Virus record (IMG/VR): IMGVR_UViG_3300044797_000098
Location: 248,001 to 312,000 of that record
Strand: one strand, 5' to 3'
DNA: 64,000 nt
Both the position numbers and the translations under genes were made by a program. Shown here in pieces: positions 202 through 64,000 of this stretch (within the stretch, counting starts at the first letter, position 1; every line of letters begins with the position of its first letter). A model generated the notes under the pieces. The model saw only the letters and a program-made list of their open reading frames with translations, did no database searches and was not told the DNA's origin.

Positions 202-285
202 GATCACCTCCTTCATGAGGGCTGTTATTAGCCATCAATTATACATTGATGGCATATTATTGGTTTATTAAGTTAAGTTTTTTCT

Positions 286-795
286 TTATTTTGTAATATA
301 TTTACTCCAAGTTTCATGCCAGCCATCTTCTACGGACATGTAATGCATATGCTCATTTGGTATGAATGGCTGTTTAATTAATTTCATTCCTGACTCTTCT
401 AATGTTTTATTACTTTTCTTAGAATTACATTTTTTACAAGCAACAACACAATTTTCGAATGTTGATTGACCGCCTAATGCCTTTGGTAAAACATGATCTA
501 TTGTCGCCTGTGTTGATTTTAAGGCTTTTCCACAATATTGACAATTATATTTATCTCTTTTTAATACATTAAGTCTCGAAAAAACTATTTTTTTAGAAAA
601 CTTACGATACACATAATATTTTAATTTTATTACTGCCGGTAAGTGCATTACACCACTGCTAACAAAAAACTTGATATTATCCCATACTGATATAACATCC
701 GCCTTACCTTTATATACTAATCTTAATGCTTTCTTTTCCTTTATGAAAGCAATAATTTCATCTGTATAATTTAGTAAAAGAGTTTTATTATGCAT
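286..795 (-). CDS. HNH endonuclease (McrA/HNH_5-like)
   Basis: RDKYNCQYCG...TIDHVLPKALGG...NCVVACKKCNSKK. Confidence 0.9.
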   Translation of the reverse strand: MHNKTLLLNYTDEIIAFIKEKKALRLVYKGKADVISVWDNIKFFVSSGVMHLPAVIKLKYYVYRKFSKKIVFSRLNVLKRDKYNCQYCGKALKSTQATIDHVLPKALGGQSTFENCVVACKKCNSKKSNKTLEESGMKLIKQPFIPNEHMHYMSVEDGWHETWSKYITK

Positions 796-1438
796 TGATT
801 AATTTTTCTAATGATACTTTTACATCTTCATGCATTGTTGCAGGTGCTTCATTTCCAATACATACCCAATCTTTTCGTTGCCTACGGGCGAACATTTCCA
901 GTTTATTTCCTTTAAACATTAAATCGAGTGAATCTTGTAAATGTTCTGGCTTGGCTGAATGTTTTAGATTTTGTCCGAATGAAACCGAACGCTGGGAACG
1001 GTTTTCTAATTGTTTATATATTTCCGTATTATTTATTCCAATAAGACATATCTCGTGTGATTGTCTAAATAATCTACCCATACCGAATGACAATAGATTT
1101 TCCATTATATATTTTACTTTATCGCGGAACCCTGCAACATTTAATAATTCATATATTGAGGTCTCTTTTTTTGATTTACACCATACATATGTTTGCTTTT
1201 GCTTAAATCCCCATGCATTCATAACGTCCATACCATCTTGTAAAATTGATGACGGAACCCATAATGCGAGAATACATCCGTTTGGATCAGCAATTTGACT
1301 AACTGGAAGATTACATATACTATTAGTTTTCATGGTGCCATTGTAATTTGCCTCGGCGCCACGTTTAACGTCTGACATTTTTAATTTATCTTTGAACGCA
1401 CCCCACGGCGGGTCTGAAACTATAACTTGAAACTTCAT
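788..1438 (-). CDS. MT-A70 family N6-adenine methyltransferase
   Basis: VIVSDPPW catalytic motif, LALWV, HSAKP, KLEMFARR...GNE. Confidence 0.9.
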   Translation of the reverse strand: MKFQVIVSDPPWGAFKDKLKMSDVKRGAEANYNGTMKTNSICNLPVSQIADPNGCILALWVPSSILQDGMDVMNAWGFKQKQTYVWCKSKKETSIYELLNVAGFRDKVKYIMENLLSFGMGRLFRQSHEICLIGINNTEIYKQLENRSQRSVSFGQNLKHSAKPEHLQDSLDLMFKGNKLEMFARRQRKDWVCIGNEAPATMHEDVKVSLEKLINA

Positions 1439-1663
1439 ATTAATTATGGCTCACTTTTTCTTTATATACACATACTGCTGATGGGTTAAATATCCCAACA
1501 CCATACTGATTTTTATTATTTTTACATATAATTCCAAAAGACTGACCATTCGGCAAAATTATAGCGCAATCATCTAAATATTTAGAATTAAATATATTTT
1601 TATATTCATTGCCTAATAAAGCATAACCATTAATTCTATTGCTAATTTTCCCATTTTCTGGAA

Positions 1664-1972
1664 TTATAGCACTTTCAATTCTAATAAGGTTCTATCTTTC
1701 ATAAATTGACGCAAAACACTATAATCGTCAATTTCTGATGGCATAATTTTAGATGCAAAAATTAATATATCAATTATTGATTTTTCAATAACATCACTAC
1801 TTATACTGTTATCAATAACATATGGTATAATCATCTTACCTTGACTAATTTCTGGTTCTAATTTATTGTTCAAAACAATATAACGAACACTTTCATGTGT
1901 ATCATATACTGGCTGCATACCACCTAAATTTTCAAACAAAAAACATTTACTTAAATTACAATTTTCTATCAT
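1664..1972 (-). CDS. hypothetical protein
   Basis: ORF coupled to neighbours by overlaps. Confidence 0.6.
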   Translation of the reverse strand: MIENCNLSKCFLFENLGGMQPVYDTHESVRYIVLNNKLEPEISQGKMIIPYVIDNSISSDVIEKSIIDILIFASKIMPSEIDDYSVLRQFMKDRTLLELKVL

Positions 1973-2304
1973 TTTCCTAATATCTCATTTATTCTATCAA
2001 TTAAATTATCAATAACAAAAATCTTTATCTTTTGCGAGTTCTCTTCGCGTTTTTCAACTAATTTATTATATCTTTTACTAATCTTGAACAACTTATCATA
2101 ATCCGTTAACTTAAACTTACTTTTTTCATTTGGAATACTATCAATCCATTTTTCTAAATCTTTTGGCATTTCTGGTATAGTTTTTAATTCCTCTGATACC
2201 TCAACTAACTCTTGACTTAACTTTACTTGATGATCAAAAAGTTCTTGCATTTGTAGATATTTTTCGACTATTTCATCATTATTATCGAATGTATATCCGT
2301 CCAT
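1969..2304 (-). CDS. hypothetical coiled-coil protein
   Basis: ORF in operon; helical composition. Confidence 0.65.
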   Translation of the reverse strand: MDGYTFDNNDEIVEKYLQMQELFDHQVKLSQELVEVSEELKTIPEMPKDLEKWIDSIPNEKSKFKLTDYDKLFKISKRYNKLVEKREENSQKIKIFVIDNLIDRINEILGK

Positions 2305-2306
2305 AA

Positions 2307-3008: not shown

Positions 3009-3556
3009 TATTGCCTATCTATAAAAATACCTACATTAATTCCAACGCGTTTCAATACTACTATATCATCAACTTTAACTTCTTCTTGGAAACTTTCATT
3101 TTCACCATACAAAATAGTCCTTGCTATACTTTCTACCTGTTGTATTGAGCCAGTATGAACAATTTTTCCTGATACAAGCAAAATATATTCTCCGACTTTT
3201 GGCTGACCTTGAACCGATTGTTCTTCCTGCGTAGTATTTTCTTCTTCTGCCGGTATTACTTTTGCTACTATATTTGGTGGCGGAAAAACATAATCATTAT
3301 TATCTATAATGTGTCCCTGTTCGACTGTTATTTCATTTCCATTATCATCAAAAATCCTGCCATCAACGGATGAAAAATCCGGATTATCTATTTTTTTCGA
3401 AGATTTCACCAATGGAACGGTTTTTCTTGGCATTTGTATTGGCTGTTTTCCTAATCGAACCCATTCAGGCTCATAAGCCTGATATTCAGGCTTATTATTC
3501 CTATTAGGATTTCTGATTATATCATCTTTATCCGACATCTTCTGTCCTCTTTGCAT
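3008..3556 (-). CDS. hypothetical protein
   Basis: 182-aa ORF in operon. Confidence 0.65.
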   Translation of the reverse strand: MQRGQKMSDKDDIIRNPNRNNKPEYQAYEPEWVRLGKQPIQMPRKTVPLVKSSKKIDNPDFSSVDGRIFDDNGNEITVEQGHIIDNNDYVFPPPNIVAKVIPAEEENTTQEEQSVQGQPKVGEYILLVSGKIVHTGSIQQVESIARTILYGENESFQEEVKVDDIVVLKRVGINVGIFIDRQ

Positions 3557-3911
3557 CTCGTTCTTGACGACGCTTTTGTTTTTTTGCTTCTTTCTTTATC
3601 TTTTCTTTTTCATATTCTCCGGAAGCAATTTTTTCTGCTTTGATTTTTTCTTCATATAAACGCTGCATTGTTTCTGCGTGCTTGCGACGTTTTTTGACGC
3701 TGGGTTTCTCATAACCCTGTTTCTCTTTATATTTAGCAAGAACACCGTCTGCTTGAACAAGCGAGCGGAATGTTTTGAATGCTCGATCGAAGTTATTTCC
3801 ATATACTTCGACTTGGAGCGGTTTAAGGTATTCCCAATCGAACTCAGGTGATGTTTCTTTTTTTAATGTTGTTGTTTCTTTTTTTGAGTATTTTTTATTT
3901 ATTTTCTTCAT
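3528..3911 (-). CDS. rpsU: ribosomal protein bS21 homologue with N- and C-terminal extensions
   Basis: VEVYGNNFDRAFKTFRSLVQADGVLAKYKEKQGYEKPSVKKRRK matches the bS21 core. Confidence 0.85.
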   Translation of the reverse strand: MKKINKKYSKKETTTLKKETSPEFDWEYLKPLQVEVYGNNFDRAFKTFRSLVQADGVLAKYKEKQGYEKPSVKKRRKHAETMQRLYEEKIKAEKIASGEYEKEKIKKEAKKQKRRQERDAKRTEDVG

Positions 3912-3957
3912 TCACATACGTGTGTGTGCACACGCTCCTTTGTTATTATATAACACG

Positions 3958-4260: not shown

Positions 4261-4261
4261 A

Positions 4262-6034
4262 TTACGCCACCATCTTTACATTTTCAATAGCCCTACACGC
4301 CGGATTTATGCATACATTAAATTTTCCGAACTTACCTTCTCGTTCGATCATATTTTGATTGCATTTTTTACATAAAACTTTATCGCCCAACTTGTTCCTA
4401 TATGCTGTTGCTAATTCTTTGGAAAATATATCATAAAACTGTTTTAATAGTTCTGTGTGCGTTATTTTACCTTCTGCTATCTTATCTAACTCCTCTTCGA
4501 TCTTCGAAGTAAAACTATAATCCATAAATGTAAATAATTCTGATAGACAATTAGTTATTTGTTTTCCCAATTCTGTCGGTTTATATGTATTATTAGTTTT
4601 CTCAACATAATGTCTATTTGATATTTTCTTAATAATTTCTGAAAAGGTCGATGGTCTTCCGATTTGTTTTTGCTCTAATTCTTTTAGCAACGAAGCATCA
4701 TTATACCTTGGCGGAGGCTGGGTATATTTTTGATCGGCTTTTATAGATTTATCGTCCAATAATAATTCTTGTTTTTCTATTAAATTTGGTATTTCAATTT
4801 TACCGGCATCAACATCACCGAATATTTTTAGATATCCACGATCTGCTAATGCTTTACCCGATGCCTTGAAAACAATTTTGTTATCGTTTTTATTCACAAT
4901 TTTTACATTTAAGGTGTTCCATATTGCCGGTGTCATTTGACTTGCAATAGCATACTGCCATATAACTGAATATAATTCCTTCTCATCACCACTCATATAA
5001 CCGCTATCAGGTAATGCATTTATATTTGTTGGACGGATTGCCTCATGTGCTGCCTGAGCGGTCTCTTTCGTTGCGTGTATATTTTTGGTTTTAGGCAGAT
5101 CATAATTATTATCTTTGATCCATTTTCTAATATCAGTGATGGCTTCTTCTGCCATCGATGTTGCGTCTGTTCTGATGTATGTAATCACTCCATTTTCATA
5201 TAACCCTTGGGCAACACTCATACATTTCTCTGGTTCCCAACCACGCTTAGCCATAACTTGTTGTAATGATGCCGTTATCAATGGTGCTGGCGGTTTCTCT
5301 TTCACTTGTTTGGAAACAACCTTTGATACAACGAAGTGCTTATTTTCTTGTATAAAAGAAACTAATTTATCTGATTGTTCTTTATTTTTTATTTTTCCAT
5401 CATACTTGGCTGAGAATGTCTCTCGTAATTGAGTTTGCAGCTTAATACCACAAGTCCAGTATTCTTCTGGTTTAAATATCTCGATCTCGTTTTCACGGTC
5501 TGAGATTAAGCGAGTGGCTACTGATTGAACTCTACCTGCCGAAAGATTATTAGCATACGCCGTCATAAGATATGGTGAAACGGTAAATCCAACGATACGA
5601 TCGAGGACGCGTCTTGCTTCCTGAGCCCTTACCATATTAGCATCTATTGCGTGCTTTTCTTTTATTCCTTTTTCTATACCATACTTAGTTATCTCATTAA
5701 ATACTGCCCTAAAAATTGGCTTGCCTGTGGATTTTAAAATATCGGCGACATCGGCACTAATTTTTTCACCCTCTCTATCTGCGTCCGTGCATAATAGTAT
5801 TTCATTACACTCACACGAAGCATTGATTATATTATCAATTACCTCAATTTTATCTTTGAGCAAAACGTAATGAGGTCGAAAATTGTTTTCGATATCGATT
5901 CCTATGCCGTGTTTGCCACCTTTTGCGAGGTCTTTCACATGACCTACCGATGCGACAACAACATAATTGTCCCCAAGATATTCCTTGATCTTCTTTATCT
6001 TGTTAGGAGACTCGACTATTACTAATGTTTTCAT
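4262..6034 (-). CDS. topA: type IA DNA topoisomerase
   Basis: TOPRIM LVIVESP and DADREGE, SAGRVQS, active-site ITYIRTD, IGRPST, C-terminal zinc ribbon. Confidence 0.97.
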   Translation of the reverse strand: MKTLVIVESPNKIKKIKEYLGDNYVVVASVGHVKDLAKGGKHGIGIDIENNFRPHYVLLKDKIEVIDNIINASCECNEILLCTDADREGEKISADVADILKSTGKPIFRAVFNEITKYGIEKGIKEKHAIDANMVRAQEARRVLDRIVGFTVSPYLMTAYANNLSAGRVQSVATRLISDRENEIEIFKPEEYWTCGIKLQTQLRETFSAKYDGKIKNKEQSDKLVSFIQENKHFVVSKVVSKQVKEKPPAPLITASLQQVMAKRGWEPEKCMSVAQGLYENGVITYIRTDATSMAEEAITDIRKWIKDNNYDLPKTKNIHATKETAQAAHEAIRPTNINALPDSGYMSGDEKELYSVIWQYAIASQMTPAIWNTLNVKIVNKNDNKIVFKASGKALADRGYLKIFGDVDAGKIEIPNLIEKQELLLDDKSIKADQKYTQPPPRYNDASLLKELEQKQIGRPSTFSEIIKKISNRHYVEKTNNTYKPTELGKQITNCLSELFTFMDYSFTSKIEEELDKIAEGKITHTELLKQFYDIFSKELATAYRNKLGDKVLCKKCNQNMIEREGKFGKFNVCINPACRAIENVKMVA

Positions 6035-6345
6035 ATCAATAACTTAAATTTCTCACATTGTTCCTGCGTCAATAAAATATATCCACATTCAATCAACTTA
6101 CGATCCATCTTTTCTTTTAATTCTTCTATCCTATCGGGAAGATCGTAAATCCACATGGGTTCGCATTTACCGTCGATATCTTGATATTCCCATCCCCATA
6201 ATTTGGTTAAACGAGATCGTGCAATACGGGCAATCGGTATGGGAAACATACTTTTATCATTTAATAAATATCGACCAATAGAATAATTCTCTTCATTAGA
6301 CTTATGATGACTTTCTCTATATGGCTCTAAATACGATCTATTCAT
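6031..6345 (-). CDS. YLxPW/GYILLT family protein, C-terminal tag (EKFKLLI*)
   Basis: YLEPY...DRKLIECGYILLTQEQCEKFKLLI. Confidence 0.75.
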   Translation of the reverse strand: MNRSYLEPYRESHHKSNEENYSIGRYLLNDKSMFPIPIARIARSRLTKLWGWEYQDIDGKCEPMWIYDLPDRIEELKEKMDRKLIECGYILLTQEQCEKFKLLI

Positions 6346-6355
6346 AATTCCGCAT
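6342..6355 (+). promoter_or_regulatory. candidate late promoter motif (TCAT-aattcc-GCAT), 7 nt before ATG 6363
   Basis: Near-identical to the motif before 23967; see finding. Confidence 0.5.
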
Positions 6356-6362
6356 ATAATTA

Positions 6363-8019: not shown

Positions 8020-8021
8020 TT

Positions 8022-8219: not shown

Positions 8220-9229
8220 TTTTGCCTCGTTAAATTAAATGTAAAATTACTATACCGATTACATATCTCGTCTGCTGTTGTGTATGCTACTTGCAATCTC
8301 AAAAAATCATTATTGTAATTTCTAATAATACAATCTCCTCGTCCGGCGAGATCTTCCGCTCCAACTGTGTCGAGTATGACTTTACTATCTATATGCGATG
8401 CAGTCTGAAACGCTATACGCGAAGATAGATTGGCTTTAATGGCACCGCTTACAATATCAACACTGGGTCTTTGAGTGGCTGCAACAATATATATACCAGC
8501 AGATCGGCACTTTTGAGCAAGAACACATAATGCCTTACTAAAAACTTTTTCTTCATCGCTCAAAACTATATCTGCCATCTCATCTATAATTAGAATTATA
8601 TTATTGAATTGCATATCTAACTGATGGCTTTTCATTTCGTATCTGCATACCATTTCTCTATTAAGATATTCAATCATATCCATTGCTTCGGCAAAATCAT
8701 TAGCAACCTTTACATTTCCAAAAGATTTATATGGCTCGAACTCTATGCGCTTCGTATCAATAACAAAAATATCTGTGTTCATTAATCTTAATGCATTAGC
8801 CATAATTACATTAAGAAAAACCGATTTACCACTTCCCGTTGCACCGCCAACTAATGTATGTGGATGGCAACTTAGGTCTGTAAAAACTTCTTTCCCGTAG
8901 ATACTTGATCCTAAATACATCGGAACATTCATATCTGATGGGACACCTAATGTATCAATTTTATCAAAAAACGATATTTTATGTGGTGCTTCTTCTACTA
9001 CCTCTAATCTGACAACGCCTTCTTCTGGTATCGCTTTAACTACTGGTGTAGTTTTTATTCTCAACGCTAACGCAATCTCTGATGCATACTTTTCAATATG
9101 TTGAACACGCGTTAATGGCGTTAACAATATATCATATAGCGCTATGTTTCTAATCTTCGTATATTTTACACACTCTGCTTTAATTTTGAACGATTTTAGT
9201 ATCGAATTTAATTTATTTATTTCTTCCAT
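8216..9229 (-). CDS. FtsK/SpoIIIE-family ATPase (no TM or gamma domain)
   Basis: PHTLVGGATGSGKS Walker A, IIDEMAD Walker B, ATQRPS, IKANLSSRIAF. Confidence 0.92.
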   Translation of the reverse strand: MEEINKLNSILKSFKIKAECVKYTKIRNIALYDILLTPLTRVQHIEKYASEIALALRIKTTPVVKAIPEEGVVRLEVVEEAPHKISFFDKIDTLGVPSDMNVPMYLGSSIYGKEVFTDLSCHPHTLVGGATGSGKSVFLNVIMANALRLMNTDIFVIDTKRIEFEPYKSFGNVKVANDFAEAMDMIEYLNREMVCRYEMKSHQLDMQFNNIILIIDEMADIVLSDEEKVFSKALCVLAQKCRSAGIYIVAATQRPSVDIVSGAIKANLSSRIAFQTASHIDSKVILDTVGAEDLAGRGDCIIRNYNNDFLRLQVAYTTADEICNRYSNFTFNLTRQK

Positions 9230-11049: not shown

Positions 11050-11058
11050 ATCCTAAAT

Positions 11059-11072
11059 ATGCAGGATTATTA
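11059..11072 (-). promoter_or_regulatory. candidate late promoter motif (TAAT-aatcct-GCAT)
   Basis: 9 nt before the ATG; the 13-mer TATGCAGGATTAT recurs exactly at 63915-63927. Confidence 0.55.
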
Positions 11073-11089
11073 GCCACCTATTTTATTAT

Positions 11090-14882: not shown

Positions 14883-14915
14883 TTAGATCTAACCTATATC
14901 ACTAAAAAATCGTCT

Positions 14916-19257: not shown

Positions 19258-19275
19258 ACATGAGACTATATCACC

Positions 19276-20572: not shown

Positions 20573-20578
20573 ATATTA

Positions 20579-21064: not shown

Positions 21065-21077
21065 CTATATAATACTA

Positions 21078-21557
21078 CTATATTGACGCCACAAAATTTT
21101 TCATTCTCGACAATCGTTTATTTAAATCCTCGTCCAATATCCAAGTCTCTGGTAATGTTTTAGTGCCTTTTGCCACTTCTTCGTATTCCTTTTTCAAGAT
21201 TTCAACGACAATGAATGAAAACCCTTGTCGTTTTAGGTTGATCTCTAATCGACGAGATAGCCATTCCACATCACCAAAACTGCGACGATCTGCAATCGTT
21301 AGCAATATAATGTTTCGTCCTTGTTTGTAAAAAATCATGTCTTCGGTGCGAGGATTATAGTTTAAAATAGCAAGACTATGTTTGACAAGATTTTTATTAA
21401 AATTGTCTTTGTCATACGACAATCCCTCAATTTCTCCTAAAAATTGAGTAATGTCTTTTTCATTTCCCCAATGATCATTGCTTGCATCAATGTTTTGGAT
21501 TGTGATGTCGTATGATGATTTTTCAATTTTTGAGTTGAGGTGTTTAAAAATTGCCAT
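21078..21557 (-). CDS. hypothetical protein
   Basis: Start moved to MAIFKH, which has an AGGAGA SD. Confidence 0.65.
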   Translation of the reverse strand: MAIFKHLNSKIEKSSYDITIQNIDASNDHWGNEKDITQFLGEIEGLSYDKDNFNKNLVKHSLAILNYNPRTEDMIFYKQGRNIILLTIADRRSFGDVEWLSRRLEINLKRQGFSFIVVEILKKEYEEVAKGTKTLPETWILDEDLNKRLSRMKNFVASI

Positions 21558-21586
21558 TGTAGTTTCTCCTGTTAAAGATTGTCTTT

Positions 21587-22804: not shown

Positions 22805-22824
22805 ATTAACAATATATCAATGAT

Positions 22825-23967: not shown

Positions 23968-23983
23968 ATAGTAATATGTGGAA

Positions 23984-25093
23984 TTATGGGATGAGGTAAT
24001 CGTCTAATGTTTTTAATATATGTTTTTGTTCATCCTTTGTTAGTTCGGGATACGATGGTAAAATAAAACATTCTTTATTTAGAATATCAGCATTCGTGCA
24101 ATCATTCCAATGCACTTTACTATTGTTATTTAGATATTTATGTTCATCAATAGCATAAAACATTGGTCGTATTTCTATATTATTTTTCTTGAAAAATGCT
24201 TCTGCTTCTTTATATCCCTTATGATTTGGAGCACGGATACCGAACATCCAATTGGAATGCGTTGTGTTTTCTTCAATTTTCTGCATAAATATATCTTCAC
24301 GATCTTTTAATGCTGTTCGATATGTTGTAAAAACTTCATTCTTCATATCTAAAATCGTTGGAAGGATTTCGATCTGACCGAGTAAAATCGCTGCTTGGAT
24401 ATTGGTAATTCTATAATTATATCCTAACTCGTTATGAATGAACCTTTGGTCTGACTGCCCTTGACCTTGAACGCATTTTATATAATTGAATATAGCCTCG
24501 TCATTGGTTAGAAAGGCGCCACCCTCGCCACTTGTAATCGATTTGTTGCCAAAGAAAGATATGGCTGAACAAAAACTTTCTGTTCCCGCTTGTTTCCCTT
24601 CATATGAACCGAATAACGCTTCGCAAGCATCCTCCACAAAAATTGTATTAGGATATTTTAGTTTTAATGCGGGAACATTAATTATATTTCCTATATTATG
24701 CACAATCAATACGGCAGCATATGGATTATCTTTTATTGCAATATCTAATTTATTTAAATCGAAGTTCCAAGTATCTAAATCTGCATCTATTGCTTTTATA
24801 GTCCAATTATTATCGAATAGAAAACCATTCCACGCTGCGACATACACATTATTTGGAACAATGATTTCATTTATTTTGTGCTTACGAATAACTGCTTTTG
24901 CCATTAAATGGCAAGCCGAAGTTCCATTATTGAGTAATTGGACATATTTAACTCCAAGTAATTCTTGTAGTTTTTCGGTCGTCTTATTAATATATTCTCC
25001 TTGCGATGATATCCAAGTGCTATCTAATGCCTTATGAGCATAATCCAATGATCCCTTTGGGAGATATGGCTTGTATATTGGAATATAATTCAT
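23984..25093 (-). CDS. DegT/DnrJ/EryC1/StrS PLP-dependent sugar aminotransferase (perosamine synthase-like)
   Basis: NNGTSACHL, VEDACEA, SFFGNKSITSGEGG, GYNYRITNIQAA. Confidence 0.95.
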   Translation of the reverse strand: MNYIPIYKPYLPKGSLDYAHKALDSTWISSQGEYINKTTEKLQELLGVKYVQLLNNGTSACHLMAKAVIRKHKINEIIVPNNVYVAAWNGFLFDNNWTIKAIDADLDTWNFDLNKLDIAIKDNPYAAVLIVHNIGNIINVPALKLKYPNTIFVEDACEALFGSYEGKQAGTESFCSAISFFGNKSITSGEGGAFLTNDEAIFNYIKCVQGQGQSDQRFIHNELGYNYRITNIQAAILLGQIEILPTILDMKNEVFTTYRTALKDREDIFMQKIEENTTHSNWMFGIRAPNHKGYKEAEAFFKKNNIEIRPMFYAIDEHKYLNNNSKVHWNDCTNADILNKECFILPSYPELTKDEQKHILKTLDDYLIP

Positions 25094-25107
25094 ACTTAAA
25101 TGCTATA

Positions 25108-26010
25108 TCATTCCTTGGCTCGTTCTAAAAATAATATAACCTCTTGTGCTAACTTTATAGGATTGTCCCATACCTGAAACATTAGTTCTCTAAATGGAAT
25201 ATGTTGGTTTCGATGTAGATCTGCCCCAAAATCTCTATGATAGTGATCTATACAAAATGTTGGTCTTTGACACAAAAATGATAGATATTGTAATCCACTT
25301 TCTTGTGTTATTACTAATTGCGTATTGGTCATTAACTCAACATCACTATCAACATCCACATAATCATACGATTTATATTTTACATTATCTAACTTAAATG
25401 TTGAATTGCTTGCTCCACATACACCTGTTGTTATACTATATTCTAATAACTTATCCACAACGAGTTGCCAGTTTTCTTGTTTCCAATTTCTATTTGGATC
25501 CATTTTTCTATTTCGCGGTGTGATTACAACATCGGTTTTTAGTCCAAAATTATGTTGTGCCTGTGGAATAAATATATTATTTGCTAATGTTTTCTTTTCA
25601 TCCCACGAAGTTTCTGATGGAGAGCAAAAATGAATATCGTCCGTATTTAATTGTTTTTTAATTTTTTCTTTAATAATTTCTTCATGATCAAACTTTTCGT
25701 ATATACCTGCTTTCATATGATCTGGAATATCTTGCCAATCGTAGAAAAATTGTGTCGCGGAAGGGTATAGGCATTCGTGTCCTCGTTTTGTGCAAACGAT
25801 TTTGTTGGCGTGGTTATAGCCTTGTATACGCTTCACGAATGTTGTGATCATCCATCCGAATTCTCCAATGAATGGAAGAAAACATACATATTTAGTTTTT
25901 GGCTGGTATTCATTTAATCCCAATACCTTGCTTAATCTTTCGAGTTCAGCGTCCATACTGTTATATATATTTATAGATATTTTCTTACTGAATTTAAAAA
26001 ATGTCCCCAA
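25108..26010 (-). CDS. putative GT-B (GT9-like) glycosyltransferase
   Basis: Cluster context; RNWKQENWQLVVDKL; ESGLQYLS. Confidence 0.5.
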   Translation of the reverse strand: MGTFFKFSKKISINIYNSMDAELERLSKVLGLNEYQPKTKYVCFLPFIGEFGWMITTFVKRIQGYNHANKIVCTKRGHECLYPSATQFFYDWQDIPDHMKAGIYEKFDHEEIIKEKIKKQLNTDDIHFCSPSETSWDEKKTLANNIFIPQAQHNFGLKTDVVITPRNRKMDPNRNWKQENWQLVVDKLLEYSITTGVCGASNSTFKLDNVKYKSYDYVDVDSDVELMTNTQLVITQESGLQYLSFLCQRPTFCIDHYHRDFGADLHRNQHIPFRELMFQVWDNPIKLAQEVILFLERAKE

Positions 26011-31731: not shown

Positions 31732-31749
31732 ATATTCCTAATAATATGC

Positions 31750-32484
31750 TTAACCATTGAAAGGTATATATATTGATTTTTGTTTTGATGAATATAGACC
31801 ACAATTTTGACGAAACTTTGCTATATTTTTTGAACGACATTCATCTTTAAATTTACGGTAATCGCCCGTATCCAACTCCCCTACGCCGAAGTGATTTCCT
31901 TTTTCTTGAATATAACCAAGTTTCCATCCTGCTAATCTACTGCGAAAACCCCAATCACTATCTTCTTCGCCATATCTTTCATATTCTGTTGTAAAAAATC
32001 CAATCCGTTCGTGCAACATTCTGTGAAAAACCATACAAGCACTTCCTAAATTACCTTGTGCTTTTATTTGGAATGTCTTCTTATTTAGTGTGATTTCAGG
32101 ATATGAAACATCTTCCATATTTACGCCAATGGAAAATGTAGGATTAACACTAATGACATCAATACATTTGTCCAACCAATTATCAGGAAACTCACAATCA
32201 TTATCTATTGTAGCAAGATACTCTGCATTATACTTTTCAGCAATTTTTAATCCACGATTTCTTCCACGAGCAATACCAAGATTTTCAGCATTTAAATGAA
32301 TATCGTATGATAGACAAAACTCATTCACTTTTAATGATTTTAGATATTCTGGCGTTCCATCTGTGGAACCATTATCTGTAATGATTAAATGGTATGGTGA
32401 TTTTGTCGTGGCAAAAAAATTATCGAATGTTCGCTGTGTGAGCGAAAGACGATTATATGTAGTAAGCATGATGCTCGTTGTCAT
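31750..32484 (-). CDS. GT2 family glycosyltransferase
   Basis: LTTYNR, ITDNGSTDGT, NLGIARGRN, IDND, YGEEDSD. Confidence 0.92.
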   Translation of the reverse strand: MTTSIMLTTYNRLSLTQRTFDNFFATTKSPYHLIITDNGSTDGTPEYLKSLKVNEFCLSYDIHLNAENLGIARGRNRGLKIAEKYNAEYLATIDNDCEFPDNWLDKCIDVISVNPTFSIGVNMEDVSYPEITLNKKTFQIKAQGNLGSACMVFHRMLHERIGFFTTEYERYGEEDSDWGFRSRLAGWKLGYIQEKGNHFGVGELDTGDYRKFKDECRSKNIAKFRQNCGLYSSKQKSIYIPFNG

Positions 32485-36463: not shown

Positions 36464-36610
36464 AGTATGAATATACTAATTTATTCATATATACCAGTGA
36501 GGAAGTTTTTCGTATTTATTGTTGCTTTATCATTATGTTATGGCTGTTCCTCAACTTAACCTCTGTTAATTCCAGTTTTATCCTCGAATGGTAAATCCGT
36601 TCAAACCAAT

Positions 36611-49669: not shown

Positions 49670-49846
49670 TTTTACCTACTTAAATGCACTTTTATTACGT
49701 TTTCTACTACTATTGATATATATTTATGGGATCAAAAACATCAAGGATATCAAATGAAAAAGTTCAATCACCAAATTAATGTAAGACTTACTGATGAAGA
49801 AATTATGCTATGCTATGTCGTTTCTTAATCAAAGAAGGTATTAAAA

Positions 49847-51565: not shown

Positions 51566-51591
51566 AACAATATAAATGCCAATATATTAGA

Positions 51592-53170: not shown

Positions 53171-53199
53171 ACCTTAAGGCTTCGATAGGCGGAAGTCAA
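53171..53199 (-). promoter_or_regulatory. sigma70-type promoter TTGACT-N17-TAAGGT
   Basis: Directly upstream of the TrmH-like gene. Confidence 0.5.
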
Positions 53200-54020: not shown

Positions 54021-54043
54021 CTATTATTATCACATTTAGTTAA

Positions 54044-55253: not shown

Positions 55254-57368
55254 TTATTCGTTGCGAATGTTTTTAACACGTCCGAAGGGAGGCTTAAACG
55301 TTTTATGATCGCTGGTAATTAGCCAAAGGACGTCGGTGCCTTTTGGTGGTGGTCGTGCATTAGATACTTCTGGATCGCTCAAAAAACCATCTGTCATAAT
55401 TATGATGAGATCAACCTTACCACATTGTTCTTCATATTCATTGAATACACGTGATACTTCTGTTCCACCACGACCATGCACCTTGGCCTTGACCAGATTT
55501 TCCTTATCTGCTTTGCTGATCTTTACCATTTCCGACCAGTATGGAACGCAATCCCAAGGACACAAAAACACCTCACCTTTTGTATCAATTACTTGTAATT
55601 GACTGATACCAAGTGCGATGTCATCACCTGACATTGAACCTGAGCAATCGTATGCAGCCAAGATATTAAGGAATACCTCTTGTTTTTTAGGCACATACAA
55701 TCCAGCAAACAATGGCCGGCTCTTGCATTTGTTCCAATTATTACGTCCTTTTCCTTCTCGTTTCTTTGACATCATTTGACGAACAAGATCTTCCCATTTT
55801 ATCTTTGGCTCCAATAGGTCATTTAATTCGTCGGAAAGGCCAAGTGGAACCTTGCCACCCATCTTTTTCGCCATTTCCGCAGCATCATACAACCTCTTGG
55901 CCAATTCATCTTCTGACACATCGCAATCCATGTGTTCATCCAAAAGATCACCGGTTCCGAATGGATCTATATATTCACTATCTCCGCCACCACATTCGGG
56001 ACAACCATTACCGCATGTTCCACATGATCCTTCTTGATCGCCACTGCAATTACCTTCTTGTCCTTGCCCTTGTCCTTGTCCTTGTCCTTGTCCTTGGCCT
56101 TGGCCTTGTTCCTCACCATCGCAACAAGCCCCACCTTCCCCTTCGCCCGGTTCTTGCCCATTGCTGGCATCAGATTGCCCGCCAGAGCCATTTTCGCTCT
56201 GTTCTTGACCTTCCCCTTTGCCCTGACCTTTGGTATTTTGAGGATTATCACATTGACCCTCATGCTCACAACTATCTCCATGATCAGAATGATCATGTTG
56301 ATCGTCTTTCTGACCCTTCATGTTTTTGCCAGCATGAGATCCTTTACCACCGGTTTTTGATGGCTTACTACCTTTGCTACCAGCACCGGGGTTAGTCTGA
56401 TTATCTTGTTCTTTTCCATCACCAGCAGATTGCTTATTACCTTCTGCCTTTGCTTTCTCTTCTGCGTCTTTCTTTTGTTGCTCTTGGATTTGTTTTTGAA
56501 GTTTCTTGTATTCGTCGGGCTTCTTATACATTCCAAGTTTTCCACATTTTGGACATTTTGGAATACACGAATATAGATATGCATAGATATTTTCTGGTTT
56601 CAGCATATCTCCTTCGAGTTTTTCTTCTGCGTAATACATTGGTGGCTTATCATCACCGGGATGCTTATATGCAGGATCGGCTTTTTCACGAAGAGCATGA
56701 ATTGGATTGAAGTGAGCAAGATGCTCTGGCGGATTAAAAGGATCCCTATACATTTGGGCAAGTTCTTCGAGAGTAATGAAGTCTCCAAGACCTTCTTTAA
56801 AATCCTTTATGTAATCTTTACGACCACGAGTTTTTAGATCCATCAATGCAACGTGATTAACTTTGAAGTCAATTGCAATGTTATATAGGCGTGGAAGACG
56901 CGAACCACGTCGGGAAGGATGCATTGCAAAAGCATGGAGGGCCTCATGTATCAAAACCAATCTCAATCCAAGTTTTGACATCTTATTCACGAAGTCTGGT
57001 GCCCAGAAAAACTGGCGACCATTGGTCGCAGCGGTCCTCAATACTTTGCCTTTCATATGGCTTTTATACTTTTTTACTTCATCAGATATTTGATCTTTTT
57101 CTTCTTTTGTTAATTCTTGGCCATCAGCAAGTTTTTTCTCGATTTCTTTTTGGCTTTTCTCAAAATCATCAAGTTGAACCCCCATCGCATCGCATATATG
57201 CGGAAGAGGGAACACTAAATTGAAAATGAAAGGGTCACCACCTAAATTAGTTCCTAACGCCCTATTGTCATAACCTAATGACAATTCGGTAAAAACCGAG
57301 GATAATTTTTCCTCCGCTTGTTTAACCAATTTAGGATCACATTTGCCAATGACTTTGCTAAACTTCAT
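55254..57368 (-). CDS. DUF2201-type metallopeptidase + VWA domain protein (MoxR partner)
   Basis: TAATNG, HEALH, YDCSGS (MIDAS), GRGGT, TDG; central low-complexity insert. Confidence 0.9.
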   Translation of the reverse strand: MKFSKVIGKCDPKLVKQAEEKLSSVFTELSLGYDNRALGTNLGGDPFIFNLVFPLPHICDAMGVQLDDFEKSQKEIEKKLADGQELTKEEKDQISDEVKKYKSHMKGKVLRTAATNGRQFFWAPDFVNKMSKLGLRLVLIHEALHAFAMHPSRRGSRLPRLYNIAIDFKVNHVALMDLKTRGRKDYIKDFKEGLGDFITLEELAQMYRDPFNPPEHLAHFNPIHALREKADPAYKHPGDDKPPMYYAEEKLEGDMLKPENIYAYLYSCIPKCPKCGKLGMYKKPDEYKKLQKQIQEQQKKDAEEKAKAEGNKQSAGDGKEQDNQTNPGAGSKGSKPSKTGGKGSHAGKNMKGQKDDQHDHSDHGDSCEHEGQCDNPQNTKGQGKGEGQEQSENGSGGQSDASNGQEPGEGEGGACCDGEEQGQGQGQGQGQGQGQGQEGNCSGDQEGSCGTCGNGCPECGGGDSEYIDPFGTGDLLDEHMDCDVSEDELAKRLYDAAEMAKKMGGKVPLGLSDELNDLLEPKIKWEDLVRQMMSKKREGKGRNNWNKCKSRPLFAGLYVPKKQEVFLNILAAYDCSGSMSGDDIALGISQLQVIDTKGEVFLCPWDCVPYWSEMVKISKADKENLVKAKVHGRGGTEVSRVFNEYEEQCGKVDLIIIMTDGFLSDPEVSNARPPPKGTDVLWLITSDHKTFKPPFGRVKNIRNE
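56058..56108. repeat. 6-bp tandem repeat encoding (QG)n
   Basis: ttgtcc/ttggcc/ttgccc, about 8.5 units. Confidence 0.9.
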
Positions 57369-57584: not shown

Positions 57585-57612
57585 TTGACATCTGGTAATA
57601 ATGTGTTATATT
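57585..57612 (+). promoter_or_regulatory. sigma70-type promoter of tnpB, TTGACA-N16-TATATT
   Basis: Inside the left end, 11 nt before the ATG. Confidence 0.6.
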
Positions 57613-57623
57613 AGTATTCAGTT

Positions 57624-61377: not shown

Positions 61378-61378
61378 A

Positions 61379-61564: not shown

Positions 61565-61630
61565 TCCAGTTTTAAAAGATATGACCGGATATATATGGAG
61601 AGAGATATTTTTTATCCATAACTAAATAAT

Positions 61631-61900: not shown

Positions 61901-62061
61901 TTGTCTTCTCTACTTTCTATGTATTTGTCAAACAATTTTCTTGCTTTTTCCGAAACCTGTGCTGCTTTTTCTTGTGCTTTTGATGCTTTAACCAATAACT
62001 TTATATCACCAAGTTTTTCGATTGATGCTACGAATTGTGAGGTTTTAGTTAGTAAATCCAT
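61897..62061 (-). CDS. 54-aa protein MDLLTKTSQF...ESREDK (not in ORF track)
   Basis: Manual translation; TAAT-aattca-GTAT 7 nt upstream; overlaps the next ATG. Confidence 0.65.
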   Translation of the reverse strand: MDLLTKTSQFVASIEKLGDIKLLVKASKAQEKAAQVSEKARKLFDKYIESREDK

Positions 62062-62079
62062 TAGTAAAATACTGAATTA

Positions 62080-62742
62080 TTAGATATCGATTACTCTCAC
62101 TGGATTGACAACTTCGTATTTGGCATTCAAAATTGCACAATTAGCGAATACGATATCGTTAATTACTTTAACCCCGCTGCTTGGATGACAATGCCCGAAA
62201 AGATGAGCCTTCAATGATTTTAATTGTTGGATGCGTTTTGCAAGCATTTCGCATCCGATATTACGAATAATCTCTTCTCCAAACCAAACCTCTCCTGTTG
62301 GAACCCGATCGAGAATGTCATATGGCGGTGAATGTGTTATGAGTATATCAACATCATTAGGGATAGCATTCCATCTTTTTGCAATATCTTCACCTCTCGA
62401 AGCCATGAACCAATACTCACCATATGCAGGTGTCCAAGGCGAACCATAAAACTTTACTCCATCAATTACATCTTCGTTATCTTCCAGATATGTGATGCCA
62501 GCATCTTGTAAGTATGCCAGAGCCGTATCACGATAGTATGATTGTGCTTGGAACCGATCATGATTACCGAATATGACATACTTCTTTTTATGAGGAAGTT
62601 CTCCCATCCATTCTGCAAAATCATTCATAATTTTTAATTGACCGCTAATGGTAATATCACCACAACACACCGCAACATCTCCATCGGGAACATCAATACC
62701 CCTATGATGTCCATGCATATCTGAAAAACTACATATTCTCAT
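62080..62742 (-). CDS. calcineurin-like metallophosphoesterase (MPPED-like)
   Basis: SDMHG, GD, GNHD, THSPP, FGHCH intact. Confidence 0.92.
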   Translation of the reverse strand: MRICSFSDMHGHHRGIDVPDGDVAVCCGDITISGQLKIMNDFAEWMGELPHKKKYVIFGNHDRFQAQSYYRDTALAYLQDAGITYLEDNEDVIDGVKFYGSPWTPAYGEYWFMASRGEDIAKRWNAIPNDVDILITHSPPYDILDRVPTGEVWFGEEIIRNIGCEMLAKRIQQLKSLKAHLFGHCHPSSGVKVINDIVFANCAILNAKYEVVNPVRVIDI

Positions 62743-63416
62743 TATACACCAAAAAACATTTTTATTTTTTCAATAATTTCATTACGAAACTCTAACGTTA
62801 TTTTTTTCCATTTTATGCGTAAAATAATCCAACCATTATCTATTAAAAATCTATCTTTCTTTTCATCTGAAAGCTTTCGTTCTAATATTTCGTGTTGTTT
62901 TCCGTCAATTTCCATCGCTAATTTTTTATCTATATTGGCAAAATCAATAAACCATTTCCCTACTTTGTATTCACGTTGATATGAAACATTAAGTTCGTCC
63001 AACATAGATATAATATATTTTTCTGGGTAGGATGGTTCTATTTTAGATCTTGATGTCCATCCAGTATGGGTTCCATTAGCCACACGTTCTTTGGCTTTAA
63101 TTGAAAGACGTTTTCTAGTTTCTGGGTTTGTAGGAGCTTGTGATTTACACTTGGTAGAGCAGTATTGTTGTGTTTTTCTATGTTTAATAACGAAGACTTT
63201 ATTACAAAATAAACAGTTTCTTTCTTGTTTTGGTTTCTGCAACGCTAATGATGTTTTTAATTTGGATGAATCTGTATGTCGTAAGTTAGAAAAATATGTA
63301 TTAGAACATCCTAATGAACATGTTGTTTTCTCTTTCGGACTACCTTGTGTAGTAGTAAATACTTTATCGCAGACTGGACAGTTTTTATTTATTAATTTAT
63401 ATTTTCTTACACCCAT
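62742..63416 (-). CDS. DUF559/Vsr-like endonuclease with N-terminal zinc ribbons (homing-type)
   Basis: SYPEK, IDFA, EIDGKQH, GW.ILRI.W; start moved to MGVRK. Confidence 0.82.
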   Translation of the reverse strand: MGVRKYKLINKNCPVCDKVFTTTQGSPKEKTTCSLGCSNTYFSNLRHTDSSKLKTSLALQKPKQERNCLFCNKVFVIKHRKTQQYCSTKCKSQAPTNPETRKRLSIKAKERVANGTHTGWTSRSKIEPSYPEKYIISMLDELNVSYQREYKVGKWFIDFANIDKKLAMEIDGKQHEILERKLSDEKKDRFLIDNGWIILRIKWKKITLEFRNEIIEKIKMFFGV

Positions 63417-63438
63417 TAATTCCAATATAGTATAAAAA

Positions 63439-63468
63439 CTCACCCAGCATTTTGACATACTGGGTGAG
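63439..63468. other. GC-rich hairpin upstream of the DUF559 gene
   Basis: CTCACCCAG...CTGGGTGAG. Confidence 0.55.
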
Positions 63469-63525
63469 CAGACCAACGAACAACACAACTAACAACGAAA
63501 GGAAACAAACAATGAAACGAACGAA

Positions 63526-63867
63526 TTAAACTTTTGGAAGATTAATCTTCGATGCTACCCATTGATAGATAGTTTCGAATGATTGAACTGGGCAGAAAAA
63601 CAAGTTTTGAAGAAAGGCTTCGAGATATTGTAATTTATTTGGCATGAATGGTGTTTTATCGATGAACAATGATTTTAGTGTAAGTGCAACACCGAGACAA
63701 CCACCAACGAGAAAATATAAACCTGTGTGGAACAATACACCAAACGCTCCACCAAGAACAACTACTGCATGGGCAAGCAACCAAGGAATTGGTTTTGAGC
63801 GATCTACCATGAAAAATACATAAACTGCGTATAATGCAAGGAAAACGAAGTGAAGGATGTTAGGCAT
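63526..63867 (-). CDS. small membrane protein
   Basis: Three hydrophobic segments. Confidence 0.65.
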   Translation of the reverse strand: MPNILHFVFLALYAVYVFFMVDRSKPIPWLLAHAVVVLGGAFGVLFHTGLYFLVGGCLGVALTLKSLFIDKTPFMPNKLQYLEAFLQNLFFCPVQSFETIYQWVASKINLPKV

Positions 63868-64000
63868 TGATTTGACTCCCTGTATATTTTGGGATTAGTC
63901 CCAGATTACTAATGTATGCAGGATTATGCCTATTTACTATTGCCCTTTTTTAAAGAATGACTTTATACAAGGCAATATATCATCATCAGATCCGATTGTT

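What the first reader, a model, noticed from the sequence alone, without database searches (positions are those of the whole stretch)
231..63927. Recurrent (Y)AAT-N6-GCAT motif 6-14 nt before start codons: candidate phage late promoter giving leaderless mRNAs
SEEN, as motif then distance to ATG: TCAT aattcc GCAT, 7 nt (6363+); TAAT aatcct GCAT, 9 (11049); CAAT atagta GTAT, 7 (21064); CCAT aattcc ACAT, 8 (23967); GAAT gatata GCAT, 6 (25093); CAAT ggttaa GCAT, 14 (31731); GAAT aaatta GTAT, 9 (36463); TAAT aaaagt GCAT, 14 (49669); TAAT atattg GCAT, 10 (51565); TATT attatc ACAT, 8 (54044+); TAAT aattca GTAT, 7 (62061). Further copies lie farther upstream of 201 and 63867. It follows gene orientation on both strands and differs from the TTGACA-type promoters also present. 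Most of these genes lack an SD. INFERENCE: a second transcription class using a phage sigma factor or RNA polymerase, with transcription starts at or near the ATG. The phage bS21 could tune initiation between leadered and leaderless mRNAs.
Basis: partly seen in the sequence, partly recalled or inferred. Interest (0 to 1): 0.62.

Follow-up and report, generated by a model that had tools for sequence, protein, structure and literature searches.

The report
Promoter-like motif in a huge phage
It is most likely a phage-specific promoter without a -35 box; where transcripts start is not known.

Summary
All 11 listed sites are in the sequence as described. A matrix built from them and scanned only outside the window places 7 of its 20 best hits 3-20 nt before a same-strand start (column-shuffled controls: mean 0.1, max 2). 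De novo search finds the same motif: about 18 bp, sCyAATAAT-tyn-RYATATw, with two conserved blocks (AAT and YAT) 10 bp apart and no -35 element. It is co-oriented with genes. It is enriched in two related phage genomes and kept upstream of orthologues while the flanks diverge.

This one looks like an extended -10 box. In a 48%-GC relative it lies exactly 7-9 nt before 20 start codons.

The genome has no detectable phage RNA polymerase. It has one sigma-70-family gene, itself behind a host-type TTGACA-N17-TATATT promoter, and a bS21 gene.

Best reading: a -35-independent non-early promoter class read by host core RNA polymerase with the phage sigma or a modified holoenzyme. "Late" is only partly supported: tail sheath and portal carry the motifs, but so do many enzyme genes. 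"Leaderless" fits the second motif well. No RNA data exist. This is a new member of a known kind.

The parts
6341..6358 (+). Class A motif copy (TTCATAATTCCGCATATA), 4 nt before ATG 6363 of a lone + strand 132-aa ORF
   Evidence: score 15.0; sequence. The gene is opposite to all its neighbours, so it needs its own promoter.
11056..11073 (-). Class A motif copy (CTAATAATCCTGCATATT), 6 nt before ATG 11049 (462 aa)
   Evidence: score 17.0. Identical in a 93%-identical relative, L092.
21072..21085 (-).
   Evidence: Sequence. Below score 9 with the de novo 18-mer matrix. SET domain.
23973..23990 (-). Class A motif copy (CCCATAATTCCACATATT), 5 nt before ATG 23967 (380 aa)
   Evidence: score 16.6
25103..25110 (-). 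Class B motif TGATATAG, 9 nt before ATG 25093 (DegT aminotransferase).
31746..31759 (-).
36470..36487 (-). Class A motif copy (TGAATAAATTAGTATATT), 6 nt before ATG 36463 (188 aa)
   Evidence: score 13.7
49681..49698 (-). Class A motif copy, 11 nt before ATG 49669 (fatty-acid hydroxylase), with AGGT 3 nt after the motif
51573..51590 (-). Class A motif copy (CTAATATATTGGCATTTA), 7 nt before ATG 51565 (223 aa)
   Evidence: score 14.7
54021..54038 (+). Class A motif copy, 5 nt before ATG 54044 of a lone + strand HNH endonuclease gene
62066..62083 (-). Class A motif copy (CTAATAATTCAGTATTTT), 4 nt before ATG 62061 of a small ORF of about 53 codons
63913..63930 (-). Class A motif copy, 45 nt before ATG 63867, with an SD-like GGGAG nearer the ATG
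8236..8253 (-). Weaker class A copy, 16 nt before ATG 8219, with an SD between
   Evidence: score 10.0
22812..22819 (-). Class B motif TGATATAT, 7 nt before ATG 22804 (255 aa). The G2 orthologue has TGATATAG, also 7 nt before its ATG.
19266..19273 (-). Class B motif TGATATAG, 8 nt before ATG 19257 (183 aa)
14894..14901 (-). Class B motif TGATATAG, 11 nt before ATG 14882 (90 aa)
57585..57612 (+). Host-type promoter TTGACA-N16-TATATT, 11 nt before ATG 57624. Its -10 hexamer coincides with columns 13-18 of a class-A-like 18-mer.
53171..53199 (-). Host-type promoter-like site TTGACT-N17-TAAGGT, 6 nt before ATG 53164
3528..3911 (-). Phage bS21 ORF of 127 aa; the S21 domain covers residues 33-85

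Best explanation
They belong to a non-early transcription class of a 406-kb contractile-tailed huge phage.

Class B is YGnTATA(G/T), which resembles an extended -10 promoter.

Inferred cascade: host RNA polymerase with the host primary sigma reads the TTGACA-N17-TATATT promoters. These are concentrated at the two genome ends and include the one in front of the phage's own sigma-70-family gene. Host core polymerase, carrying the phage sigma or a phage-modified host holoenzyme, then reads class A and B sites across the central ~40-320 kb.

The elements abut the translation start region. For class B the geometry (hexamer TATAKN, 6-8 nt, ATG) predicts transcripts that begin at or 1-3 nt before the AUG.

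For class A two registers remain:
(i) YATATW is the -10 hexamer and AATAAT is an upstream auxiliary block. The RNA then starts at the AUG, or at the SD that follows 3-5 nt later.
(ii) AATAAT is the -10 hexamer and the invariant YAT is the start site. This gives SD-less leaders of 6-12 nt, or SD-containing leaders of about 16-24 nt.

Shown: the motif, its position, its orientation, its conservation, the presence of a sigma gene, and the absence of a detectable phage polymerase. Inferred: that it is a promoter, which sigma reads it, and where RNA starts.
For:
- The same motif is the top de novo hit in intergenic upstream regions (73 sites) and ranks above the SD motif.
- Sense against antisense in the same windows: 45 against 11.
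- Enrichment near starts in relatives. G1: 8 of 27 against 0.43. G2: 12 of 50 against 1.25.
- Orthologue footprint, G0 against G2, at a median 42% protein identity: odds ratio 3.9, p = 0.002. Distances match at several pairs.
- G0 against G1: motif columns 72% identical against 60% for the flanks, and the spacer columns vary.
- Upstream of the 548-aa gene in four more relatives, CCATTATT and CAT are kept while the 3-nt spacer changes.
- Portal upstream regions from 27 to 48% GC keep G(A/G)TATA(G/T).
- Variable distance: 25 copies lie 1-7 nt from the start, 16 lie 11-19 nt (12 of them with AGG 3-7 nt after the motif), and 14 lie 25 nt or more. This fits a promoter better than a ribosome-binding signal.
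- Lone opposite-strand genes (6363+, 54044+, genome 397399+) carry the motif directly upstream.
- In G2, 20 of 107 GATATA(G/T) copies lie exactly 7-9 nt before a start, against 0.08 expected per bin.
- There is no -35 element upstream of either class.
- The sigma gene has regions 2 and 4 and sits behind TTGACA-N17-TATATT, 11 of 12 matches.
- Near-start motif copies are concentrated at 40-320 kb, while TTGACA-type sites are concentrated at the genome ends.
- Tail sheath (class A) and portal (class B) carry the motifs.
Against: - No transcript 5' ends are available. All public runs holding this phage are DNA.
- First genes after a strand switch are not significantly richer in the motif than genes that follow a same-strand gene (p = 0.14-0.79). 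My ORF calls are crude, so this test is weak.
- Most copies lie in 12-40-nt spacers between co-directional genes and hug the start codon or SD. An RNA-level signal would also do this.
- The sigma has a region 4, yet the motif has no -35 partner.
- Neither candidate -10 register has the classical A-11/T-7 conservation pattern. In register (i) T-7 is only 49% T. In register (ii) A-11 is 81% and T-7 is 71%.
- In register (i), 16 of the 25 short-distance copies leave only 1-4 nt between the hexamer and the ATG. That is tighter than usual for bacterial polymerases (the usual spacing is from my own knowledge).
- The matrix is AT-rich and of low information. Most of the 150 intragenic hits are probably chance.
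Confidence: 0.6

Rival explanations
1. The motif acts in RNA, not DNA. It could be a translation signal for SD-less genes (for example an AU-rich ribosome or S1 landing site), an operator for a phage translational regulator like T4 RegA, or an endonuclease processing site that trims polycistronic RNA just upstream of each cistron.
For: - Copies hug the start codon (1-7 nt) or the SD (AGG 3-7 nt after the motif).
- They sit mostly in 12-40-nt spacers between co-directional genes: 25 of 73 such genes, against 9 of 333 genes with gaps of 11 nt or less.
- 39 of 41 short-distance genes lack an SD.
- First genes after a strand switch are not enriched.
Against: - 14 of 55 copies lie 25-47 nt upstream with ordinary SDs far downstream.
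- Lone opposite-strand genes, which have no upstream co-directional transcript to process, carry the motif.
- The YATATW half matches the -10 hexamer of the TTGACA-type promoters of the same genome, and coincides with it at 57595, genome 172651 and genome 375716.
- Class B has extended -10 anatomy.
Confidence: 0.2
2. The conserved blocks are the binding site of a phage DNA-binding regulator, an activator or repressor. The 157-aa protein with a sigma region-4-like helix-turn-helix is one candidate. The site would overlap weak -10-only promoters, so the motif marks a regulon rather than the sigma-contacted element itself.
For: - Two conserved trinucleotide blocks lie 10 bp apart, on one face of the helix, with a variable spacer.
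- A small region-4-like HTH protein is encoded at genome 220752-221225.
- There is no -35 element.
Against: - The blocks are not a direct or inverted repeat of each other.
- Nothing links that protein to the motif.
- This rival is compatible with, not exclusive of, the promoter reading.
Confidence: 0.12
3. The motif is a promoter for a phage-encoded RNA polymerase. Its form would resemble the AACA-N6-TA/G late promoters of phage AR9 or the 17-bp T7-type promoters.
For: - Formal resemblance: a tetranucleotide, N6, then a conserved YAT. AR9 late promoters are AACA-(6N)-TA/G with the last base as the start site (PMC5312081).
- The element is about 17 bp long and begins with TAATA.
Against: - No match to beta-prime (PF00623) or beta (PF00562) models, with all 14 control genomes ringing.
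- No T7-type match, but that control did not ring anywhere, so this search is uninformative on its own.
- None of the 31 largest ORFs (all >= 615 aa) scanned against PHROGs and/or Pfam is polymerase-like. They are tail, baseplate, portal, terminase, DNA polymerase, helicases and others.
- The middle of the motif, where single-subunit polymerases read specificity, is the variable part.
Confidence: 0.05
4. The pattern is chance, produced by AT-rich intergenic DNA and a loosely defined pattern.
For:
- The genome is 36% GC.
- Neighbouring spacers also give some hits: N3 gives 8 and N8 gives 10 in the window.
Against: - Column-shuffled matrices of the same composition never reach the observed near-start counts, 0 of 200.
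- The motif is recovered de novo.
- It is conserved in a 48%-GC relative and upstream of orthologues.
Confidence: 0.03

Closest known systems
Middle and late promoters of Thermus phage P23-45 (extended -10 class, host polymerase re-targeted by phage proteins gp39 and gp76)
   Same: - Non-early phage promoters without a -35 element, read by host core polymerase. [quoted passage not shown]
- From my own knowledge (Berdygulova et al. 2011, a paper not held in the library), most of those transcripts are leaderless.
- Class B here has the TG/YG-n-TATA anatomy and sits 7-9 nt before the ATG.
   Different: - P23-45 encodes no sigma; it uses sigma-4-displacing proteins. This phage encodes a sigma with regions 2 and 4.
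- Class A has no TG at -15/-14. It has an AATAAT block instead.
- No start sites have been mapped here.
T4-type late promoters (TATAAATA, read by gp55 with gp33 and the sliding clamp)
   Same: - A short AT-rich element of about 8 bp resembling a -10 box, with no -35, placed just upstream of many genes in tightly packed same-strand clusters. This includes virion genes.
- A phage-encoded sigma-like factor is involved.
   Different: - TATAAATA is not enriched near starts here: 92 copies, 3 within 30 nt of a start.
- The sigma here has a region 4. T4 gp55 has only a region-2-like part (my own knowledge).
- T4 late mRNAs carry SD leaders.
Promoters of phage-encoded sigma factors with both -35 and -10 boxes (Bacillus phage SPO1 gp28 and gp33/34; the late -10 box is GATATT)
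   Same: - A phage sigma-70-family protein redirects host core polymerase.
- The SPO1 late -10 hexamer GATATT (my own knowledge) resembles class B GATATA/T.
   Different: SPO1 promoters have a conserved -35 box 17-18 bp upstream. None is found here.
Late promoters of the non-virion polymerase of jumbo phages AR9 and phiKZ (AACA-N6-TA/G; TATG)
   Same: Very short conserved words ending at the start site, in jumbo phages, found by motif over-representation (PMC5312081).
   Different: - Those need phage multisubunit polymerases, which this genome lacks.
- AR9 leaders are 26-491 nt long.
Leaderless genes of bacteria such as mycobacteria (-10 box a fixed 6-7 nt before the ATG)
   Same: - Class B and 4 of 14 TTGACA-type promoters place the hexamer 6-8 nt before an ATG.
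- No SD in 39 of 41 short-distance genes.
- ATG is the start codon in 89% of them, against 69-77% of all crude calls.
   Different: - Start sites are unmapped.
- Class A distances are 1-2 nt too short in one register and 6-12 nt too long in the other.

Membership tests
Canonical sigma-70 promoter (-35 plus -10) | A conserved -35 element (TTGACA-like) 16-18 bp upstream of the -10 hexamer | tested here: not met
   Information content is about 0 in the 45 columns upstream of 46 aligned class A sites and of 55 class B sites in G2. Separate TTGACA-N17-TAnnnT promoters do exist elsewhere in the genome.
Canonical sigma-70 promoter (-35 plus -10) | A -10 hexamer with highly conserved A-11 and T-7 | tested here: inconclusive
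   With YATATW as the hexamer, A-11 is 99% but T-7 is only 49%. With AATAAT as the hexamer, A-11 is 81% and T-7 is 71%.
Extended -10 promoter | TG (at least the G) at -15/-14, one base before the hexamer | tested here: met
   Met for class B only. In G0 the word is TGATATAG: 48 copies, 12 of them intergenic, on 5% of the genome. In G2, G is 85% and the preceding base is C or T. Class A does not have it.
T4-type late promoter | A TATAAATA box just upstream of late genes | tested here: not met
   92 copies in the genome, only 3 within -3 to 30 nt of a start, and no peak.
T4-type late promoter | A gp55-like sigma with a region 2 only | tested here: not met
   The only sigma-like ORF with a region 2 also matches region 4 of RpoD/RpoS models at residues 152-230.
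Phage RNA polymerase promoter (T7-like, or phiKZ/AR9-like) | A phage-encoded RNA polymerase gene | tested here: not met
   PF00623 and PF00562: no match, and the controls ring in all 14 genomes. PF00940: no match, but its control is silent, so that search is uninformative. 31 largest ORFs scanned against PHROGs and/or Pfam with no polymerase. A very divergent enzyme cannot be excluded.
Leaderless mRNA gene | The transcription start coincides with the A of the start codon | not testable with these tools
   No RNA run holds the phage. The reads tool returned DNA contigs only.
Leaderless mRNA gene | A -10 hexamer at a fixed 6-8 nt from an ATG start, with no SD | tested here: inconclusive
   Class B meets it: in G2, 31 of 55 G(A/T/G)TATA(G/T) sites lie 7-9 nt from the start. 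For class A the distance from column 18 is 1-7 nt (mode 3-6) at 25 sites, and 11 nt or more at 30 sites. 39 of 41 short-distance genes lack an SD, and 89% start with ATG.
Sigma-70 family protein (the phage factor proposed to read the motif) | Region 2 and region 4 domains | tested here: met
   - PF04542: 22.2 bits, just under its cut-off of 24.
- phrog_351 'RNA polymerase sigma factor': 2.7e-11.
- TIGR02937: 42.5 bits against a cut-off of 42.9, covering residues 68-228.
- RpoS chains in the PDB: 6e-7.
The individual scores are borderline but agree with each other.

The most novel reading that the evidence does not exclude
A clade of uncultivated huge phages (36-48% GC, 400-470 kb) runs most non-early gene expression from compact promoters without a -35 box, read by its own region-2-plus-region-4 sigma. 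These promoters start RNA at, or within a few bases of, the AUG or the SD. The same phages carry bS21 to adapt host ribosomes to such leaderless or minimal-leader messages. Class A would then be a previously undescribed two-block promoter architecture (AAT and YAT one helical turn apart) for a sigma-70-family factor.
Probability: 0.15. Interest if true: 0.65.

Novelty: new member of a known kind. Interest (0 to 1): 0.4.

Why it matters
Huge phages known only from metagenomes have essentially no mapped regulatory signals. A validated promoter consensus would allow their genomes to be split into temporal classes. It would improve start-codon and small-ORF calling; for example, a 53-codon ORF at 62061 is flagged only by the motif. 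It would also give a direct in vitro test for the function of a phage-encoded sigma factor. If many of these transcripts are leaderless or have minimal leaders, the co-occurrence with a phage bS21 gene would make the long-standing question of why phages carry bS21 experimentally approachable. As it stands, this is an ordinary but well-supported phage promoter prediction.

Tried and rejected
- DNA and protein searches of the cultured-phage collection with 12 kb of the window and with the sigma gave no match, so no annotated relative could be used.
- The first EM run on all upstream regions recovered only 3-periodic coding signal. I restricted it to intergenic DNA.
- Test of first genes after a strand switch against same-strand followers: not significant. 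It is weakened by spurious minority-strand ORFs in my crude gene calls.
- Sequencing runs: only DNA contigs from peat and rhizosphere metagenomes. Laying four runs on window 19200-25150 (5951 letters, within the operators' limit) showed a strain about 92% identical. The variant table was truncated before the motif positions, so it gave neither a population footprint nor 5' ends.
- The PF00940 search is uninformative because its control rang nowhere.
- I tried to align class A and class B as one element. No register gives both the same distance to the ATG; the offset is 1.5-4 nt. I therefore keep them as two classes that share a YATAKW-like half.
- Sigma-54-type -24/-12 reading: rejected, because there are no GG/GC blocks.
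- The Berdygulova 2011 paper on P23-45 is not held in the library.
- Not used: the big protein searches, structure prediction and complex prediction. The claim does not rest on them.

Full report
**Context.** The window is bases 248,001-312,000 of a single 406,470-bp IMG/VR virus record. The record is 35.6% GC, estimated 95% complete, and assembled from a peat metagenome. About 84% of crude ORF calls lie on the minus strand. The phage has a contractile tail: tail sheath, baseplate J, tape measure, portal and large terminase were all identified. It encodes DNA polymerase, helicases, ribonucleotide reductase, an NAD-dependent ligase and many sugar- or lipid-modifying enzymes. No cultured phage matches it at the DNA level, and the sigma protein has no match either.

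The pattern is loose, so I tested it four ways.
- The strict core AAT-N6-GCAT has 116 genome copies. Nine lie 0-20 nt before a same-strand start, against 0 and 1 for spacers N5 and N7.
Genome-wide it is 38 against 9.6.
It places 7 of 20 hits (score >=14) and 8 of 47 hits (score >=12) 3-20 nt before a same-strand start. 200 column-shuffled matrices of identical composition gave means of 0.1 and 0.34 and never reached the observed counts.
- In the same upstream windows, sense hits outnumber antisense hits 45 to 11. Inside genes there is no strand bias, 45 to 49.

**What the motif is.** The 18-column consensus is sCyAATAAT-tyn-RYATATw. Information peaks at AAT (columns 3-5) and YAT (columns 13-15; A 99%, T 96%), which lie 10 bp apart. 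Nothing is conserved in the 45 bp upstream, so there is no -35 box.

TGATATAG has 48 copies, 12 of them in the 5% of the genome that is intergenic, and 11 copies lie 4-22 nt before starts. The site at 25093 is of this kind.

**Relatives.** The phage sigma protein retrieved two related IMG/VR records: G1 (102 kb, 36% GC, sigma 78% identical) and G2 (435 kb, 48% GC, sigma 54% identical).
- In G2 the dominant de novo motif is class B (tcGATATAt).
- Twenty of the 107 GATATA(G/T) copies in G2 lie exactly 7-9 nt before a start codon, where 0.08 per bin is expected. They also lack a -35 box.
- Among 161 reciprocal-best orthologue pairs between G0 and G2 (median identity 42%), having a motif upstream is correlated: odds ratio 3.9, p = 0.002.
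- Distances are preserved while the flanks are unalignable. Examples are 7 against 8 nt, 8 against 7, 7 against 7, portal 16 against 14, and class A before the 548-aa and 130-aa genes in both genomes.
- Between G0 and G1 the conserved columns are 75-94% identical. The spacer columns are 56-62% and the flanks 60%.
- Four further relatives keep CCATTATT and CAT before the 548-aa gene while the three spacer bases change.
- Portal genes from 27 to 48% GC genomes keep G(A/G)TATA(G/T) upstream.

**Position and downstream genes.** Of 55 class A copies (score >=10) near starts:
- 25 lie 1-7 nt from the start (22 ATG, 3 GTG, no SD);
- 16 lie 11-19 nt away, 12 of them with AGG 3-7 nt after the motif, which is a normally spaced SD;
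- 14 lie 25-47 nt away.

The element is therefore not at a fixed distance from the ATG, but it abuts the translation start region. Copies fill 12-40-nt spacers between co-directional genes: 25 of 73 such genes, against 9 of 333 genes with shorter gaps. They also precede lone opposite-strand genes at 6363+, 54044+ and genome 397399+.

In the window the driven genes are a SET-domain protein, a DegT aminotransferase, a methyltransferase-glycosyltransferase, a fatty-acid hydroxylase, an HNH endonuclease and unknowns. Elsewhere class A precedes the tail sheath and two endonucleases. Class B precedes the portal, a glycosyltransferase, a RuvC-like resolvase, an exonuclease and a transposase. 'Late' is therefore only partly apt; 'non-early' is safer. 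Near-start copies concentrate at 40-320 kb, while TTGACA-type sites concentrate at both genome ends, which are GC-richer and hold small genes.

**Transcription machinery.**
- No beta or beta-prime domains were found, with all controls positive.
- There was no T7-type hit, but that control was silent.
- No polymerase was found among the 31 largest ORFs, all >= 615 aa.
- One sigma-70-family ORF lies at genome ~88,641-89,270 (minus strand). It has region 2 and region 4 matches.
- The 'TTG start' that the ORF listing gave for it is in fact the -35 hexamer of a TTGACA-N17-TATATT promoter with 11 of 12 matches. The true ATG lies about 40 nt downstream. This agrees with the G2 orthologue aligning from residue 24.
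- The sigma therefore looks like a gene transcribed by unmodified host polymerase, as expected for the first step of a cascade.
- A 157-aa protein with only a region-4-like helix-turn-helix is encoded at genome 220752-221225.
- bS21 is confirmed at window 3528-3911.

**Where would RNA start?** This cannot be settled here.

Register (i) takes columns 13-18 (YATATW) as the -10 hexamer.
- For: it equals the TATATT hexamer of the genome's own TTGACA promoters. It coincides with that hexamer at window 57595-57612 and at genome 172651 and 375716. The EM also aligns the TATAGT of class B to these columns.
- Consequence: RNA would start about 5-8 nt downstream, at the AUG (leaderless) or at the first bases of the SD.
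- Against: T-7 is only 49% T, and 16 of the 25 short-distance copies leave only 1-4 nt before the ATG.

Register (ii) takes AATAAT (columns 3-8) as the hexamer and the invariant YA(T) as the start site.
- For: the geometry is constant. One TTGACA promoter (genome 313031) pairs with this block. The SDs lying 3-5 nt after the motif would be safely inside the RNA.
- Consequence: the 'leaderless' genes would instead have SD-less AU-rich leaders of 6-12 nt.

I weight the two registers about equally. For class B the geometry (TATAKN, 6-8 nt, ATG) is the classical leaderless one. Four of 14 host-type promoters share it, so this phage-host system probably tolerates leaderless messages. Short-distance genes start with ATG in 89% of cases, against 69-77% of all crude calls, and 39 of 41 lack an SD.

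**Comparison with known systems.**
- The closest functional analogue is the extended -10, -35-independent middle and late promoter class of Thermus phage P23-45 (PMC7403470). The leaderless nature of those transcripts is from my own knowledge, because the paper is not held.
- T4 late promoters share the logic of a -10 box alone plus a phage sigma. They do not share the sequence (TATAAATA is not enriched) or the sigma type.
- The late promoters of AR9 and phiKZ are formally similar short words (PMC5312081), but they require phage polymerases that are absent here.
- Huge phages are known to encode sigma-70 and bS21 (PMC7162821). Phage bS21 expression has been linked to late replication in Bacteroidetes phages (PMC9723584).
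- In E. coli, ribosomes lacking uS2 and bS21 favour the leaderless lambda cI message (PMC10491246). A bS21-leaderless connection is therefore conceivable, but its direction is unclear and it is untested here.

**Verdict.** The interpretation as a separate promoter class is the best explanation (about 0.6). The phage-sigma part is plausible, the phage-polymerase part is not supported, and 'late' and 'leaderless' are only partly supported. This is a new member of a known kind. It is of moderate interest, mainly as an entry point to regulation in uncultivated huge phages.

Noticed in passing
genome 88,641-89,339 (-), outside the window; L001:1174-1872: The only sigma-70-family gene of the phage. 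The TTG start given by ORF listing is really the -35 hexamer of a TTGACA-N17-TATATT promoter. The true ATG is about 40 nt downstream, after a small hairpin.
   Followed up: yes
genome 220,752-221,225 (-); L074:1336-1809: A 157-aa protein with only a sigma-70 region-4-like helix-turn-helix (PF04545, 27.2 bits). Its G2 orthologue has a class B motif 9 nt before the ATG. It may be a transcription regulator.
   Followed up: partly
window 61902-62061 (-): An ORF of about 53 codons that a >=60-aa ORF list misses. It sits 4 nt behind one of the best-scoring motif copies. A crude longest-ORF call picks the opposite strand here.
   Followed up: partly
window 20390-23377: A contig of run X5 joins 20390 to 23377 with 8632 other letters in between. 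A strain variant therefore has a different cassette in place of the genes between the SET-domain gene and the 380-aa gene. Runs X3 and X4 hold a strain about 92% identical, with an 18-nt insertion at 21732.
   Followed up: no
window about 49-121: A GC-containing hairpin (AGGACGCAA...TTGCGTCCT) followed by a T-run on one strand and an A-run on the other. It lies between two divergently oriented small ORFs and looks like a bidirectional intrinsic terminator.
   Followed up: no
window about 3912-3935; also genome about 8.8, 30.5, 31.7, 33.6 and 34.2 kb: Alternating purine-pyrimidine tracts (of the CACACACG and GCGCGTGC types) recur in intergenic regions, including directly upstream of the bS21 ORF. 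Unexplained.
   Followed up: no
window 4262-6034, 20579-21064, 23984-25093, 29830-31731, 49181-49669, 55254-57368: Gene content of the window: a type IA topoisomerase, a SET-domain protein, a DegT-family aminotransferase, a methyltransferase-glycosyltransferase fusion, a fatty-acid hydroxylase, and a DUF2201 metallopeptidase with a VWA-like domain. This points to surface-glycan or lipid modification functions.
   Followed up: partly
G2 (IMGVR_UViG_3300038463_000730), class B sites: In the 48%-GC relative, the bases just before the ATG of class B genes are often GGT or GGC (for example ...cGGTATG). This may mark the start site or a minimal leader.
   Followed up: no
genome 1190, 172651, 301164, 369895 (window 53164 for the third): Four of 14 TTGAC-N17-19-TAnnnT host-type promoters end 6-8 nt before an ATG. 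Leaderless geometry is therefore not confined to the phage-specific motifs.
   Followed up: partly
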